From IMG/VR virus record IMGVR_UViG_3300027668_000008, positions 124,001-188,000 of that record: DNA of 64,000 nt; one strand, given 5' to 3'. The translations under genes were made by a program, and so were the position numbers. A model generated the notes under the pieces. It had not been told where the DNA came from and ran no database searches. It was given only the letters and a program-made list of their open reading frames with translations. Numbering within the stretch: position 1 is the first letter of the stretch; each line of letters opens with the position of its first letter. Below are positions 4,223 to 50,503 of this stretch, piece after piece.

Positions 4223-4312
4223 TGGCGGAGAGACTGGGATTTGAACCCAGGAAAGAGTTGCCCCTTTGCCGGTTTAGTAAACCGGTGCTTTCAACCGCTC
4301 AGCCATCTCTCC
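4223..4312 (-). tRNA. tRNA-Ser (long variable arm), anticodon ACT
   Basis: GGAGAGA/TCTCTCC stem, G73, long variable arm AAAG-GGGCAACT-CTTT, arm CCGGT-TTACTAA-ACCGG, encoded CCA. Confidence 0.88.
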
Positions 4313-19582: not shown

Positions 19583-19894
19583 CTATTTGTCTTCTTCGAT
19601 TCTCACTTCTAACGGGTATCCGTCGTTTCTAGCCGCTAGTGTAACTTCGATGCCTTTTTGTTCTGCCATTTCATAAGGATAAGTTGCCACTACGGCTGAA
19701 CCATCTTCGTGTATGTCTACAACAATTTTATTGGCTTGTGCATCTGTATATTCAAAGTAATCTGTTAAACAACTAACTACAAATTCCATTGTAGTTACAT
19801 CATCATTTAACATGATAACTTTCCATAAATTAGGTTCTTTTAGCTCTACTTTAGATGCCGGTTTTACTATGGTTGCATTATTTGTATCTGTCAT
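19583..19894 (-). CDS. clpS: N-degron adaptor ClpS
   Basis: WKVIMLNDDVTTMEFVV, DIHEDGSAVV, AEQK, YPLEV. Confidence 0.93.
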   Translation of the reverse strand: MTDTNNATIVKPASKVELKEPNLWKVIMLNDDVTTMEFVVSCLTDYFEYTDAQANKIVVDIHEDGSAVVATYPYEMAEQKGIEVTLAARNDGYPLEVRIEEDK

Positions 19895-20023: not shown

Positions 20024-20458
20024 TTACTTAATTTCGATTGTTTTTGGCTTCTTAGACTCTGGAATAATCTTTTCCAATGATACTGTAAGTAAACCATCTT
20101 TTAGTTCTGCACCCTGTGTTACCATATCTTCTGCAAGTGTGAACTTTCTAACAAACTGACGTTTTGAAATACCTTTATGTATTACGCCAGGTTCTGGCTC
20201 TTGCCCTTCATCTGATACTACAGATTTGATGATTAGCTCGTTTTCGATAGTTTTGACTTCAATGTCGTCTTTACCGAATCCTGCTAATGCAACTTCAATA
20301 GTATATGTAAGGTCACCTGTTTTAATGATATTGTACGGTGGGTAATTCAACTGGTTACCTGAGCTCATACGTTCGAAAGAATCGAACATCTCGTCAAAGC
20401 CGATTGTCATCGGGCGTAATTGGTTGAAAAATGATAGATTTGTTTTGTATTGTGTCAT
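20024..20458 (-). CDS. ibpA: Small heat shock protein Hsp20 (IbpA-like)
   Basis: NYPPYNII, IEVALAGF, IHKGISKRQF, LKDGLLTVSL, KPKTIEIK. Confidence 0.95.
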   Translation of the reverse strand: MTQYKTNLSFFNQLRPMTIGFDEMFDSFERMSSGNQLNYPPYNIIKTGDLTYTIEVALAGFGKDDIEVKTIENELIIKSVVSDEGQEPEPGVIHKGISKRQFVRKFTLAEDMVTQGAELKDGLLTVSLEKIIPESKKPKTIEIK

Positions 20459-25590: not shown

Positions 25591-26265
25591 TTATATACTA
25601 ATATTTAGTTGTTTAAGTCTAGGGTTGACTACTAGTTCAGCCCAGTCTTTATGTGCTTGTTCGCCTGGGTGATCTGCTATCCATTCATAATTGTAATCAT
25701 CTGTAAACTGCCAAAGTCCGCTTTTTTCTTCATGAAACATCCAATTATTCCAATTTACTTGATTCCATAATTGTTCTATATAATGTTTCTCATCATTTGT
25801 TTTTAGTTTTTCAAAAAATGAATTATCACGTTTATTCATATCCCAATCTGCGTAAACCATATCTCCCATATGGGAGAACAAAACAGGAATATTATTTACT
25901 TTACAAGTATTTTGTATTAATAATATATATTCTAATGTTTTTGCAAATTGATTGAAATCTGTATAAAAGTATTTTAAGTAATTTTCTTTAGGGCCTGTAT
26001 AACTAGCACCTTCTGATTTGTATGCATTATATTCAGGCATATACCAATCATAACGTTCAATAGTACTCCACATAATAACTACTGCTTCAGTACTACTATC
26101 AATGTTGTCTAACACTCTACGAGCAATTAATCTGTTACCTGCTCCACCTATTGCTACATTTTTAGAATTTGGGATAAAGTTGGGCCAGTGTTTATAATCG
26201 ACATCATTATTATTGACGTCTTTGTGTGATCCGATTGTAAAACTACAACCACTACATAATATCAT
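25591..26265 (-). CDS. SGNH/GDSL-like hydrolase-fold protein
   Basis: GCSFT, NVAIGGAGN, C-terminal DHPGEQAH. Confidence 0.65.
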   Translation of the reverse strand: MILCSGCSFTIGSHKDVNNNDVDYKHWPNFIPNSKNVAIGGAGNRLIARRVLDNIDSSTEAVVIMWSTIERYDWYMPEYNAYKSEGASYTGPKENYLKYFYTDFNQFAKTLEYILLIQNTCKVNNIPVLFSHMGDMVYADWDMNKRDNSFFEKLKTNDEKHYIEQLWNQVNWNNWMFHEEKSGLWQFTDDYNYEWIADHPGEQAHKDWAELVVNPRLKQLNISI

Positions 26266-26310
26266 TGAATACCTCTTATTGTAATATACTTATCTTATCT
26301 TATTTTAACC

Positions 26311-26340
26311 AAAAAAAATCCCCAGGCAGAGTGGGGATTT
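26311..26340 (-). terminator. Rho-independent terminator downstream of tmRNA
   Basis: AAATCCCCA-CTCTGCC-TGGGGATTT followed by a T tract. Confidence 0.85.
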
Positions 26341-26479
26341 AAAATTACTTGGTACTTTTTATATATCTGTATATAGTTCGTCACGTTCACTGAAACGTGT
26401 GCAATTAGAAAGTGTATTTCCATGTTACCAGTGTATGCTTGTAACAATCCTTTGTCACTAATGTTTCTAACTTTGGTAT

Positions 26480-26745
26480 ATGCAACGATTTCTGTTGCTA
26501 GGTACGTTGCCAACCCCCACGTGCTTATTTTACTAAGCCGCTAATGCCATTTCTGGCTGATAATTGTTATTTGCAATTATAAAGTTTCTTCGCGATAACG
26601 GTGCTTAGATCCCGAGAACTCCACTAACTCTAGTAATTACCTGTCGATCCTATTCATCCCCATATGAAAAATCTGTTGTATTTGGTGGAGATGCCGGGAT
26701 TCGCACCCGGGTCCAGTTTAACTTTTGAATTGCTTCAACGTTCTA
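26480..26745 (-). ncRNA. ssrA: Circularly permuted two-piece tmRNA (alphaproteobacterial type), tag ANNNYQPEMALAA
   Basis: Acceptor piece ends with T-arm and CATCTCCACCA at 26683; 21-nt spacer; coding piece starts GGGGATGAATAGGATCGAC at 26661 (G3:U70); tag ORF 26574-26533; CCTAGCAACAGAA near the 3' end. Confidence 0.93.
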
Positions 26746-26749
26746 AGTA

Positions 26750-26780
26750 TATTTATACACTATTCACTTGACTTTGTCAA
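26750..26780 (-). promoter_or_regulatory. Hybrid sigma70 / late promoter of tmRNA
   Basis: TTGACA-N17-TATAAA, where the -10 is part of TATAAATA. Confidence 0.8.
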
Positions 26781-26865
26781 CCAAATAATATACAAATAAA
26801 GTACTAATATTAAAAATAAAAGATAAGTATTCTATAAAAGCAAAATACATCAACTAAAGGTAATT

Positions 26866-27114
26866 ATGAAGAAATTAAGAACTTACACGTTTATTGACGG
26901 AGAAGACACAAAAACAATCGAAGCCCTATCTTATAGGAAAGCAGTAAGATCATTCCAAGGTGGATCAGAAAGCAAAGTTGTTAGAGTAGAATGGGAAGCC
27001 AAAAAAGGCGGTGAATACGAAAAGATCCAAACATTACCCTTAGGTAGAAAAATAAGACAAGCGGCAATAATACAAGCGAAAAAAGATATTGCCAAAGCAA
27101 AGATCGGAAAATAA
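26866..27114 (+). CDS. Small basic hypothetical protein
   Basis: 82-aa ORF below a TAAGTA box. Confidence 0.75.
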   Translation: MKKLRTYTFIDGEDTKTIEALSYRKAVRSFQGGSESKVVRVEWEAKKGGEYEKIQTLPLGRKIRQAAIIQAKKDIAKAKIGK

Positions 27115-27478: not shown

Positions 27479-27880
27479 ATGGAACATCTTGTACATAAAC
27501 ATATTATCATCAGAGCTGATGTAATAAATCCACCGTTAGATGCTACAAGTACATCTGACAGTGTAAAAGAATTAATTCAACAAATAGGTATGAAAATACT
27601 TATGGGACCTTACGCAACATATTGCGATATGCCAGGTAACAGAGGTCTTACAGTTGCAACAATAATAGAAACTTCACATATAGTATTACATTCATGGGAC
27701 GAATCAAGTCCTGCTAATCTACAATTAGATGTTTATACTTGCGGTGAGTTTAATCCCCAAATAGTATTCGATTGGTTAAAACAATTTAACCCTGTCAGAG
27801 TAGACTACAAATACTTAGACAGAGAACACGGTTTAACCGAAATAGATATACACCCCTCAACAGTAAATATAGCAGTTTAA
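27479..27880 (+). CDS. speD: Pyruvoyl-dependent S-adenosylmethionine decarboxylase family protein
   Basis: HKHIII, GLTVATIIETSHIVLHSWDE, QLDVYTCG. Confidence 0.85.
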   Translation: MEHLVHKHIIIRADVINPPLDATSTSDSVKELIQQIGMKILMGPYATYCDMPGNRGLTVATIIETSHIVLHSWDESSPANLQLDVYTCGEFNPQIVFDWLKQFNPVRVDYKYLDREHGLTEIDIHPSTVNIAV

Positions 27881-49894: not shown

Positions 49895-50503
49895 TTAATA
49901 TAACTCCTTAATTTTGTCTGCTATACCAAATTTGACTGCTTCTTTGGCTGATAACCAAATGTCCTGTGGTGGTAACAATACTTCTCTGATTTTCTTTTCA
50001 GATAATCCAGTACATTTTTTATAATGTTGCATCATACGTTCGCTTGATAGTTCAAACTCTCTAACACGGGCAAATAACTCATGTTCTTTACCTGTTGAAC
50101 CCCAACTGTATTGATGTGATAAAATACTTGTATTAGGCGTAATGATACGTTTGCCTTTTGCTCCACTCATAAATGTAAGTATACCACAACTTGCAATAAG
50201 TCCTAGTCCTACGGTTTTGATTGGAATACCACTTGCCTTCATTGTATCAATTAAAGCAAATGCACTATGCACATCACCGCCTGGACTATTAATAATAAGT
50301 GTTAGCTCTTTAGGGCGTTCAGTATCCGGTGCCAAGTTCTTTTCAATAATCCACTGAATTACTGGCTTTGTAGTTTCAGTTGTAAATGGATCTGCAAAGT
50401 AATAAACACCTGCCTCCCACATAAGTATTCCAGGTGGTTTAGGTTGCACTGTAGGTTTTCCTTGTTTAACGTTTTTCATTATTTGATTCTCCATATTATT
50501 CAT
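49895..50503 (-). CDS. clpP: ClpP-family protease
   Basis: INSPGGDV, GLIASCG (Ser), ILSHQY (His), DIWLSAKEAVKFGIAD. Confidence 0.92.
   Translation of the reverse strand: MNNMENQIMKNVKQGKPTVQPKPPGILMWEAGVYYFADPFTTETTKPVIQWIIEKNLAPDTERPKELTLIINSPGGDVHSAFALIDTMKASGIPIKTVGLGLIASCGILTFMSGAKGKRIITPNTSILSHQYSWGSTGKEHELFARVREFELSSERMMQHYKKCTGLSEKKIREVLLPPQDIWLSAKEAVKFGIADKIKELY

What the first reader, a model, noticed from the sequence alone, without database searches (positions are those of the whole stretch)
26480..26780. Permuted two-piece tmRNA with its own tag variant and a hybrid early/late promoter
The gene order acceptor-CCA, 21-nt spacer, coding piece is diagnostic of alphaproteobacterial ssrA and indicates the host group. 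The tag ANNNYQPEMALAA keeps the ClpX ALAA degron, but its upstream part may differ from the host tag and change adaptor use. The -10 box doubles as TATAAATA, implying expression throughout infection.
Basis: partly seen in the sequence, partly recalled or inferred. Interest (0 to 1): 0.6.

Follow-up and report, generated by a model that had tools for sequence, protein, structure and literature searches.

The report
Phage two-piece tmRNA, early-plus-late promoter
A 307-kb marine phage carries its own complete, naturally expressed ribosome-rescue RNA (a two-piece tmRNA of the alphaproteobacterial type), driven by a promoter that joins a host-type and a phage-late-type signal and is conserved in about thirty related uncultured phages; phage tmRNAs are known, this promoter design seems not to have been described.

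Summary
On the minus strand at 26744-26472 lies a circularly permuted (two-piece) tmRNA. ARAGORN gives the tag ANNNYQPEMALAA. Rfam scores are tmRNA_permuted 112.7 bits and alpha_tmRNA 107; the beta and cyano models fall below their cut-offs.

The window belongs to a 306.7-kb marine T4-related jumbo myovirus. Its nearest cultured relatives infect Rhizobiaceae. It encodes a gp55-type late sigma factor, and TATAAATA precedes its virion genes.

The composite promoter is conserved in at least 28 distinct related IMG/VR tmRNA loci, with unrelated N17 sequences, and it ends about 5 nt before the acceptor piece. It is absent upstream of 65 bacterial alpha-type tmRNA genes.

Contigs from four marine metatranscriptome studies cover only this transcription unit. 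One ends exactly at the predicted 5' end of the coding piece.

The tag differs from its phage relatives (ANDNYQPEMALAA) by one G-to-A change (D3N). This was seen in 0 of 68 bacterial tags and in no other phage copy.

Two claims go too far: gene order alone is not diagnostic of alphaproteobacteria, and the host is not established. The adaptor idea is untested. Verdict: a new member of a known kind, with a new regulatory detail.

The parts
26775..26780 (-). -35 box TTGACA, preceded by GG as in this phage's early promoter class
   Evidence: Read directly. The class GGTTGACA-N16-18-TAnnnT has 40 intergenic sites in the genome. The box is conserved at exactly 17 nt from the octamer in at least 28 distinct related loci.
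26750..26757 (-). TATAAATA octamer. It serves as an off-consensus -10 (TATAAA, no T at position 6) and as an exact T4-type late-promoter box.
   Evidence: the sigma-70 scan does not call it. 14 of the genome's 22 TATAAATA sites are intergenic, and they precede virion genes. The box is conserved upstream of the tmRNA in relatives. It is absent upstream of 65 bacterial alpha tmRNA genes.
26683..26744 (-). Acceptor piece: outer-helix strand AGAAC (26744-26740), P2 strands, T-arm (26710-26694), 3' acceptor strand CAUCUCC (26693-26687), discriminator A, CCA (26685-26683). The predicted +1 is A26744.
   Evidence: T-stem and inner P2 helices show compensatory changes. The 5-nt gap after the octamer fits T4 late-promoter geometry, box at -13 to -6 (PMC2988020).
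26662..26682 (-). 21-nt intervening spacer, removed on maturation
   Evidence: In relatives it is 29 to 493 nt and forms a covarying helix that extends the acceptor stem. RNA contigs X17 and X18 bridge it, and X20 ends at 26661.
26472..26661 (-). Coding piece, conserved body: 5' acceptor strand GGGGAUG, D-loop analogue AAUAGGAUCGAC, outer-helix strand GUUCU (26619-26615), PK1 hairpin, tag ORF, 3' helix GCAACG/CGUUGC (26510-26505 / 26487-26482) with the conserved loop ACCUAGCAACAGAA
26530..26574 (-). Tag reading frame: GCA resume codon, ANNNYQPEMALAA, then TAG TAA
   Evidence: Relatives encode ANDNYQPEMA(L/M)AA; the focal copy differs by GAC to AAC.
26341..26471 (-). 3' trailer of unknown role, transcribed with the tmRNA
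   Evidence: RNA contig X15 reaches 26350. No Rfam family matches, fold z = -2.0, and it is not found in other viral contigs.
26316..26340 (-). Intrinsic terminator (9-bp stem followed by a T-run)

Best explanation
This is a working phage-encoded two-piece tmRNA (ssrA) of the alphaproteobacterial type. It sits on its own roughly 430-nt transcription unit in a marine T4-related jumbo myovirus.

Proposed mechanism, step by step:
1. Transcription starts at about A26744 from a composite promoter. The host sigma-70 holoenzyme can use the perfect -35 box TTGACA with the 17-nt-spaced TATAAA. This step is inferred.
2. After the switch to late transcription, the phage gp55-type sigma factor can use the same TATAAATA octamer. 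This step is inferred from the motif, from the gp55 homologue, and from conservation across relatives.
3. Both routes give the same 5' end, which is already the first base of the helix that joins the two pieces. No 5' leader then needs to be removed.
4. Host tRNA-processing enzymes cut out the 21-nt spacer. This leaves an acceptor piece ending in CCA and a coding piece beginning GGGGAUG. This step is partly supported by RNA contig ends.
5. Host AlaRS charges the RNA through G3.U70 and the A discriminator. Host SmpB and EF-Tu deliver it to stalled ribosomes. These steps are inferred; the phage has no SmpB.
6. Translation resumes at GCA and appends ANNNYQPEMALAA. The ALAA end targets the product to Clp-type proteases. 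This step is inferred.

The likely benefit is to keep ribosome rescue, and the disposal or recycling of truncated proteins, running through a long infection while host RNA synthesis declines.
For: Identity and integrity:
- ARAGORN and two Rfam models detect the gene, and the subtype is alpha.
- All tRNA-like identity elements are read directly.
- The resume-codon context UAUAAUUGCAAA matches the family consensus.
- The T-stem, inner P2 helices, spacer helix and 3' helix show compensatory changes across relatives.
- The outer helix can form in 31 of 31 members, with three standard pair types at its second position.

Expression:
- In four marine metatranscriptome studies, the only contigs lying on a 901-nt stretch fall within 26350-26723, at 99% identity or better. 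None lies on the flanking protein genes.
- One contig ends exactly at 26661.

Promoter:
- TATAAATA is rare in the genome (22 sites), yet 14 of those sites lie in the 6% that is intergenic. They read TATAAATAcTA 5-25 nt before the start codons of tail-fibre, tail-spike-like and virion protein genes, with no -35 box.
- A gp55-type late sigma factor is encoded next to gp46/gp47 homologues.
- The early class GGTTGACA-N16-18-TAnnnT has 40 intergenic sites.
- Among related phage tmRNA loci, 20 of 24 have exact TATAAATA. Of these 24, 18 are fused to TTGACA/T at N17 and 4 have a separate sigma-70-type promoter 5 nt upstream. A further 16 loci of the same tag family all have the fused form, and the N17 sequences are unrelated.
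- The gap from octamer to acceptor piece is 5 nt in 25 of 31 loci. This fits the T4 late box at -13 to -6 (PMC2988020).
- None of 65 bacterial alpha-type tmRNA genes has TATAAATA upstream.

Terminator.
Against: - There is no direct mapping of the transcription start site, no time course of infection, and no test of processing, alanylation or tagging.
- Contigs cannot prove RNA ends or strand. Two RNA-library contigs bridge the spacer, so they come from precursor RNA or from contaminating DNA.
- The -10 element lacks the near-invariant T at position 6, so early use by sigma-70 may be weak. The tool's consensus scan does not call it.
- The gene scores far below bacterial alpha tmRNAs on RF01849: 107 bits against 160-313. 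It is therefore much diverged.
- PK1 pairs only 3-4 bp in the focal copy.
- Each 5-bp outer helix, taken alone, is not significant against shuffled sequence.
- The host is unknown, so compatibility with host SmpB and AlaRS is assumed.
Confidence: 0.8

Rival explanations
1. The tmRNA is functional, but the promoter is a plain host-type (sigma-70) promoter. [quoted passage not shown]
For: A perfect TTGACA lies at 17 nt, and many relatives have TG at -15/-14, an extended -10. Buchholz et al. placed the Melnitz ssrA behind an early promoter (PMC9004378). HTVC008M's tmRNA has TTGACA but no TATAAATA.
Against: This phage's 40 early promoters use TATAAT, TATTAT or TATACT, with T at position 6. Only two sites in the whole genome combine TTGACA-N17 with TATAAATA. 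The full octamer, not just a hexamer, is conserved in at least 28 lineages. In four loci TATAAATA stands apart, 5 nt downstream of a complete sigma-70 promoter, where it cannot act as that promoter's -10. The same octamer without a -35 box precedes virion genes, and a gp55 homologue is present.
Confidence: 0.12
2. The RNA acts mainly as a competitor or re-router of host trans-translation rather than as a supplement. It would outcompete host tmRNA for SmpB and attach a tag whose D3N change escapes a host adaptor, or suits the phage's own ClpA/ClpS/ClpP set.
For: D3N is unique among 68 bacterial tags and more than 29 phage tags. The phage encodes ClpA-type, ClpS and ClpP-family proteins but no SspB, ClpX or SmpB. 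A tRNA-like-domain-only phage tmRNA inhibits host tmRNA in E. coli (cited in PMC11915505).
Against: Close relatives keep ANDN, so D3N is a single recent G-to-A change in an AT-rich genome and may be neutral. The C-terminal ALAA is kept. From background knowledge of E. coli, ClpS inhibits ClpAP action on ssrA-tagged proteins. No binding data exist, and neither the host nor its adaptor is known.
Confidence: 0.06
3. The gene is a non-functional passenger: a captured host ssrA, or an integration-site remnant, in the process of decay.
For: Its score on the alpha model is low compared with bacteria. One RNA contig carries a frame-shifting 1-nt deletion at low depth.
Against: The gene is complete, with its own promoter and terminator. 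It is conserved, with compensatory changes, in dozens of phage lineages. It is found in metatranscriptomes from four studies. It is not a 3' fragment of the kind that att sites leave behind.
Confidence: 0.02

Closest known systems
Two-piece (permuted) ssrA of marine T4-like phages: Pelagibacter phage HTVC008M and OM43 phage Melnitz (Buchholz et al. 2022, PMC9004378)
   Same: Alpha-type permuted tmRNA carried by a marine T4-related myovirus. It has a complete tag frame ending in LAA or ALAA. HTVC008M scores 90.6 bits on RF04321 with tag ANFNEYALAA. The Melnitz gene is described as lying behind an early promoter.
   Different: No blastn-level similarity to the focal gene or to its relatives L157 and L167 was found in the phage collection. 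HTVC008M lacks the TATAAATA box and the phage-family acceptor-piece 5' segment. Melnitz is reported with a glutamine riboswitch, and none was found here. The focal phage is a 307-kb jumbo phage of another lineage.
Bacterial alphaproteobacterial two-piece tmRNA (Caulobacter type; Rfam RF01849)
   Same: Same gene order and the same tRNA-like domain, with G3.U70 and ACCA. Same D-loop analogue, resume context, 13-residue tag ending in ALAA, and conserved 3' loop ACCUGGCAACAGAA.
   Different: It scores 107 bits, where 146 of 151 sampled genomes score above the cut-off, mostly at 160-313 bits. Bacterial genes have a CTATAT-type -10 and a leader hairpin. The phage gene has neither; instead it has TTGACA-N17-TATAAATA with +1 on the mature 5' end. 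The tag starts ANNN, not ANDN.
tmRNA of Sinorhizobium jumbo phages (Phosso; AP-J-162, PMC11242549)
   Same: These are the closest cultured relatives of the focal phage by DNA polymerase, at 48.7% identity. Phosso carries an alpha-type permuted tmRNA scoring 108 bits.
   Different: The Phosso spacer is about 400 nt, ARAGORN misses the gene, and its tag is ANDNVSTKVALAA. Its relative Atu_ph07 has no tmRNA.
T4 late promoters (TATAAATA read by gp55; Geiduschek and Kassavetis 2010, PMC2988020)
   Same: Identical 8-bp box and geometry consistent with -13 to -6. A gp55 homologue is present, and the box precedes virion genes.
   Different: Here the box is fused to a -35 hexamer at 17 nt and drives a stable RNA gene. 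Activity has not been tested.

Membership tests
Two-piece (permuted) tmRNA, alpha subtype (Rfam RF04321 / RF01849) | Covariance-model score above the curated cut-off, and higher than for the other permuted subtypes | tested here: met
   RF04321 scores 112.7 bits (cut-off 47) and RF01849 scores 107 (cut-off 50). The beta model scores 53.6 against a cut-off of 84, and the cyano model 32.6 against 70.
Two-piece (permuted) tmRNA, alpha subtype (Rfam RF04321 / RF01849) | tRNA-like domain: 7-bp acceptor stem with G3.U70, discriminator A, encoded CCA, and a T-arm | tested here: met
   Read directly. The acceptor stem is invariant and the T-stem shows two compensatory columns.
Two-piece (permuted) tmRNA, alpha subtype (Rfam RF04321 / RF01849) | Permuted order: acceptor piece ending in CCA, then an intervening segment, then the coding piece | tested here: met
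   The spacer is 21 nt; bacterial spacers range from 3 to 105 nt.
Two-piece (permuted) tmRNA, alpha subtype (Rfam RF04321 / RF01849) | Tag reading frame with an alanine resume codon in the consensus context, a hydrophobic C-terminus and a stop | tested here: met
   UAUAAUU-GCA..., tag ANNNYQPEMALAA, stops TAG TAA.
Two-piece (permuted) tmRNA, alpha subtype (Rfam RF04321 / RF01849) | Helices that hold the two pieces together, supported by covariation | tested here: met
   Inner P2 helices have changes on both strands in 1-3 of 6 sequences. The outer helix can form in 31 of 31 members with A-U, G-C, U-A and C-G variants. Each 5-bp helix alone is not significant.
Two-piece (permuted) tmRNA, alpha subtype (Rfam RF04321 / RF01849) | Pseudoknots flanking the tag frame | tested here: inconclusive
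   The PK1 hairpin forms only 3-4 bp in the focal copy. The 3' helix and its loop pairing covary when read by eye. No formal pseudoknot test was run.
Two-piece (permuted) tmRNA, alpha subtype (Rfam RF04321 / RF01849) | Processing of the precursor into two RNAs | tested here: inconclusive
   One RNA contig ends exactly at 26661, and two bridge the spacer. Contigs cannot prove RNA ends.
Two-piece (permuted) tmRNA, alpha subtype (Rfam RF04321 / RF01849) | Alanylation, SmpB binding and trans-translation activity | not testable with these tools
   Needs biochemistry. The phage encodes no SmpB.
T4-type late promoter | 8-bp TATAAATA box about one helical turn upstream of the start; no -35 box needed | tested here: met
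   The box lies at 26757-26750. Ten of the other 13 intergenic copies lie within 150 nt upstream of a gene start, most of them 5-25 nt before it. Twelve of those 13 lack a TTGACA -35 box at N17. Geometry follows PMC2988020.
T4-type late promoter | gp55-type late sigma factor encoded by the phage | tested here: met
   G000 248160-249008 (-): phrog_12791 at 254 bits and phrog_234 at 86 bits, E = 1.6e-60 to Atu_ph07 gp694, in gp46-gp47-gp55 synteny.
T4-type late promoter | gp33 co-activator and gp45 sliding clamp | not tested
   Not searched for.
T4-type late promoter | gp55-dependent initiation late in infection | not testable with these tools
   Needs start-site mapping in infected cells or in vitro transcription.
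Sigma-70-type (early) promoter | -35 TTGACA, 16-18 nt spacer, and -10 TATAAT with A at position 2 and T at position 6 | tested here: not met
   The -35 box is perfect and the spacer is 17 nt. The -10 is TATAAA, with no T at position 6, so the consensus scan does not list it. It may still work like an early promoter, but that is not shown.

The most novel reading that the evidence does not exclude
A large, uncultured marine group of T4-related phages has remodelled ssrA into a phage-specific module. The module is leaderless and driven by a fused sigma-70/gp55 promoter, so both polymerase forms start on the mature 5' nucleotide. It carries phage-only tag families (such as ...YQPEMALAA) that are read by the phage's own ClpA/ClpS/ClpP rather than by the host adaptor pathway. 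In the focal phage, D3N would mark a further shift in adaptor recognition. On this reading the phage runs its own protein-tagging and recycling branch through late infection.
Probability: 0.12. Interest if true: 0.7.

Novelty: new member of a known kind. Interest (0 to 1): 0.42.

Why it matters
Phage-encoded tmRNAs have been catalogued: about 2% of phage genomes carry one, and two-piece forms come mostly from marine phages. Why phages carry them, and when they are made, remains open.

This locus and its roughly 30 relatives give a concrete, testable answer on timing. The conserved composite promoter should work with both host-type and phage-late polymerase. It is placed so that the primary transcript already has the mature 5' end.

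This argues that rescue or tagging capacity is wanted throughout infection, not only at takeover. It also offers a compact natural example of a dual-specificity promoter for studies of T4-type transcription.

Two limits follow for annotation. An alpha-type ssrA is only weak evidence for host assignment. This phage tag family was not found in 401 sampled alphaproteobacterial genomes.

Tried and rejected
- blastn of the focal tmRNA and of two relatives against about 50,000 cultured phage genomes gave no tmRNA match, only tRNA-Gly or short T-arm hits.
- Host assignment failed.
  - The exact T-arm 22-mer recurs in Maricaulales/Caulobacterales, but also in Elusimicrobia and Acidobacteriota tmRNAs, so it is too short to use.
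  - BLAST of the whole gene against 401 evenly sampled alphaproteobacterial genomes gave at best 57 bits.
  - The tag pattern NDNYxPEMA was found in 0 of 401 genomes.
  - Genome names behind G handles are withheld, so no labelled tree was built.
- I rejected the idea that the 21-nt spacer is special. Fifteen of 68 bacterial genes have spacers of 21 nt or less.
- The 3' trailer matched no Rfam family at a relaxed threshold and was not found in other viral contigs.
- RNAalifold mis-paired the outermost helix, so I scored it separately.
- A 15-mer scan of IMG/VR returned mostly chance hits and had to be filtered with ARAGORN.
- Two papers on the alphaproteobacterial SspB adaptor were not held. 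Statements about adaptor contacts therefore rest on background knowledge only.
- No complex prediction was run, because I make no binding claim.
- The phage has no SmpB, SspB or ClpX zinc-finger domain.

Full report
**1. Observation**

The finding is real and lies on the minus strand.

- ARAGORN reports a permuted tmRNA at 26442-26775 with tag ANNNYQPEMALAA**.
- Rfam reports tmRNA_permuted at 112.7 bits (cut-off 47) and alpha_tmRNA at 107 bits (cut-off 50).

Reading the reverse strand gives the following anatomy:

- TTGACA at 26780-26775, then a 17-nt spacer, then TATAAATA at 26757-26750.
- An acceptor piece at 26744-26683. It holds the T-arm (CCGGG / UGCGAAU / CCCGG), the 3' acceptor strand CAUCUCC, discriminator A and CCA.
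- A spacer of exactly 21 nt at 26682-26662.
- The coding piece starting GGGGAUG at 26661. This gives a G3.U70 wobble, the alanine identity element.
- The D-loop analogue AAUAGGAUCGAC.
- The resume codon GCA at 26574, in the consensus context UAUAAUU-GCA.
- The 13-codon tag, then TAG TAA.
- A strong intrinsic terminator at 26340-26316.

**2. What the window is**

- The window is bases 124001-188000 of a 306,714-bp IMG/VR virus record. GC content is 35.9%. The record has 8 tRNAs and this one tmRNA.
- The two ends share a 160-nt repeat with 4 mismatches, so the genome is probably complete.
- It is a myovirus, with tail sheath, baseplate wedge and DNA polymerase genes.
- By DNA polymerase, its closest cultured relatives are Sinorhizobium phage Phosso (48.7%) and Agrobacterium phage Atu_ph07 (45.4%). 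The Rak2/121Q-like jumbo phages follow at about 41%.
- DNA runs that hold the locus are marine, seawater or plankton metagenomes from more than ten studies.

**3. Subtype and host claim**

- The alpha model scores 107 bits. The beta model (53.6, cut-off 84) and the cyano model (32.6, cut-off 70) both fail. The alpha subtype is therefore supported.
- Gene order itself is not diagnostic. Permuted genes occur in three bacterial lineages and in mitochondria (PMC11915505).
- The spacer length is ordinary. In 68 bacterial alpha-type genes spacers run from 3 to 105 nt with median 29, and 15 are 21 nt or shorter.
- The phage gene is a strong outlier. In a sample of 151 alphaproteobacterial genomes, 146 exceed the cut-off, mostly at 160-313 bits.
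- BLAST of the whole gene against 401 sampled genomes gives at best 57 bits.
- The exact T-arm 22-mer is shared with Maricaulales/Caulobacterales tmRNAs, but also with unrelated phyla.
- Phage Melnitz carries an alpha-type ssrA while infecting OM43 (PMC9004378). This shows that subtype does not fix the host.
- An alphaproteobacterial host is plausible, given the nearest cultured relatives, but it is not shown.
- The samples include one unpublished genome (G035). Only tallies rest on it.

**4. A phage family with compensatory changes**

Three word searches of IMG/VR recovered dozens of low-GC viral contigs with permuted tmRNAs. These contigs share proteins with the focal phage at 30-66% identity. 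One keeps the tmRNA near nrdB, as in the window. One lies on a 342.6-kb contig.

Structure across the family:

- The T-stem, the inner P2 helices and the 3'-terminal helix change on both strands. The 3' helix reads GCAACG/CGUUGC here, and CCACUU/AAGUGG, GCCAC/GUGGC or GGAGGGA/UCCCUCC elsewhere. Its loop ACYUAGCAACAGAA is conserved.
- In relatives the spacer forms a long covarying helix that extends the acceptor stem. The focal 21-nt spacer is a minimal version of this.
- The outer helix that joins the two pieces is AGAAC/GUUCU here. It can form in 31 of 31 members, with several pair types. A 5-bp helix alone is not significant against shuffled sequence.

Comparison with cultured phages:

- Phosso carries an alpha-type tmRNA with a spacer of about 400 nt. 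Atu_ph07 has none.
- HTVC008M has a permuted tmRNA of a different design.
- blastn of the focal gene and of two relatives found no member of this family in the collection of cultured phage genomes.

**5. Expression**

Six marine metatranscriptome runs from four studies hold part of the locus. I laid one run from each study on 26100-27000. Each gave a single contig at 99% identity or better:

| Run | Contig span | Note |
|---|---|---|
| X15 | 26350-26647 | flanked by adapters |
| X17 | 26491-26723 | bridges the spacer |
| X18 | 26501-26707 | bridges the spacer |
| X20 | 26451-26661 | ends at the first G of GGGGAUG |

- Nothing lay on the flanking protein genes.
- The pattern fits an abundant stable RNA bounded by the predicted start (about 26744) and the terminator.
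- The X20 contig ends exactly at the predicted 5' end of the coding piece.
- The two contigs that bridge the spacer come from precursor RNA or from DNA.
- Contigs cannot prove RNA ends or strand, so processing is supported but not shown.
- The tag sequence is identical in three of the four contigs. X17 has a 1-nt deletion in an A-run, at depth 2.8.

**6. Promoter**

Within this genome:

- TATAAATA occurs 22 times. The median for 8-mers of the same composition is 46. Fourteen of the 22 sites lie in the 6% of the genome that is intergenic.
- Most of those sites read TATAAATAcTA, lie 5-25 nt before a start codon, and lack a -35 box. Where annotation is possible, they precede virion genes: a 1287-aa tail fibre, a 521-aa tail-spike-like protein, a 398-aa virion protein and a 694-aa virion protein.
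- The phage encodes a gp55-type late sigma factor (phrog_12791 at 254 bits, phrog_234 at 86 bits). It lies in gp46-gp47-gp55 synteny, as in Atu_ph07 and T4 (PMC6102473).
- A separate early class, GGTTGACA-N16-18-(TG)nTATnAT, has 40 intergenic sites.
- The tmRNA promoter has the early -35 box, but its -10 is TATAAA. That lacks T at position 6, so the consensus scan does not list it. The -10 forms the exact late octamer instead.
- Only one other site in the genome combines the two boxes.

Across relatives:

- Of 24 distinct tmRNA loci, 20 have exact TATAAATA and 2 have TATAACTA.
- Eighteen of the 24 are fused to TTGACA/T at exactly 17 nt. Four have a complete sigma-70-type promoter 5 nt upstream of a free-standing TATAAATA.
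- All 16 further loci of the ANDNYQPEMA(L/M)AA family have the fused form, and their N17 sequences are unrelated.
- The gap between the octamer and the first base of the acceptor piece is 5 nt in 25 of 31 loci. With the T4 late box at -13 to -6, that base becomes +1 (PMC2988020).
- None of 65 bacterial alpha-type genes has TATAAATA upstream. They show a CTATAT-type -10 and a leader hairpin instead.

Conservation of both boxes, but not of what lies between them, is the signature of selection for recognition by both polymerase forms. The free-standing late box in the tandem loci points the same way. 'Expression throughout infection' remains an inference from this architecture.

**7. Tag**

- Length (13 residues, the modal value) and the ALAA ending (35 of 68 bacterial tags) are typical.
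- The start is not typical. ANDN occurs in 60 of 68 bacterial tags, and ANNN in none.
- The nearest tags are phage ones. ANDNYQPEMA(L/M)AA occurs in 16 contigs, and the focal gene differs from it by a single GAC to AAC change.
- The NDNYxPEMA tag pattern that this family encodes was not found in 401 sampled alphaproteobacterial genomes.
- Whether D3N alters adaptor binding cannot be judged here. From background knowledge, the N-terminal tag residues are the SspB contact region in E. coli and Caulobacter; the specific papers were not held.
- The phage encodes a ClpA-type unfoldase (ClpA equivalog, 774 bits over its full length), ClpS (Pfam 94.9 bits) and a ClpP-family protein (111 bits). It has no SspB, ClpX zinc-finger domain or SmpB.
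- Atu_ph07-like phages are already known to carry several Clp genes (PMC6102473).

**8. Verdict**

- This is a genuine and almost certainly functional phage-encoded alpha-type two-piece tmRNA. That kind is already known from marine phages (PMC9004378), from the tmRNA database (79 phage entries, PMC11915505) and from huge phages (PMC7162821).
- Two things add value. The first is the conserved composite early/late promoter, with its leaderless start. The second is natural-sample RNA evidence.
- The D3N tag change and the 130-nt 3' trailer remain unexplained.
- I rate it a new member of a known kind, of moderate interest.

Noticed in passing
G000 1-160 and 306555-306714 (outside the window): The genome ends share a 160-nt direct repeat with 4 mismatches. 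The record is therefore probably a complete, terminally redundant or circularly assembled genome, although it is listed as linear and 87% complete.
   Followed up: partly
window 19583-19894 (-), window 49895-50503 (-), G000 74604-76940 (-), window 20024-20458 (-): The phage encodes ClpS, a ClpP-family protease (beside a UvsW-like helicase, not beside head genes), a full-length ClpA-type unfoldase and Hsp20. It has no ClpX, SspB or SmpB. This is a phage-borne proteolysis set alongside the tmRNA.
   Followed up: partly
window 26341-26471 (-): A trailer of about 130 nt lies between the conserved tmRNA body and the terminator. It is present in an RNA contig, matches no Rfam family, and is absent from relatives.
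   Followed up: partly
window 4223-4312 (-): ARAGORN gives tRNA-Ser the anticodon ACT (A at position 34). This is unusual for a bacterial-type tRNA. It sits in a cluster with tRNA-Arg(GCG), Ala(TGC) and Thr(TGT).
   Followed up: no
G000 26410-26440 (+), outside the window: This is the only other TTGACA-N17-TATAAATA composite promoter in the genome. It precedes a 174-aa ORF with no PHROG match.
   Followed up: partly
L156 10619-10692, L157 1026-1099 and their relatives: In two groups of related phage contigs, a tRNA-Gly(TCC) begins a few nt after the tmRNA 3' helix. RNase P cleavage of that tRNA would then define the 3' end of the coding piece.
   Followed up: no
L018 1501-2190 (-) (Sinorhizobium phage Phosso); L158 and L169: These permuted tmRNAs have very long intervening segments, about 400 nt and 493 nt. 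ARAGORN fails to detect them, but Rfam models or direct reading do.
   Followed up: partly
window 26570 (RNA contig of run X17): There is a one-base deletion in the AAA run at the resume codon, in one low-depth metatranscriptome contig. If real, it would shift the tag frame. It is probably an error or a rare variant.
   Followed up: no
L178, L189 (unnamed 1.2-Mb, 32-33% GC alphaproteobacterial genomes) versus L167, L168, L273: The phage tag ANESYALAA nearly equals the tag ANESYAIAA of two small, low-GC genomes. Part of this phage tmRNA family may therefore track streamlined marine hosts.
   Followed up: partly
window 27479-27880 (+): An S-adenosylmethionine decarboxylase-like gene (Pfam AdoMet_dc, 54.6 bits) is transcribed divergently from the tmRNA.
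   Followed up: no
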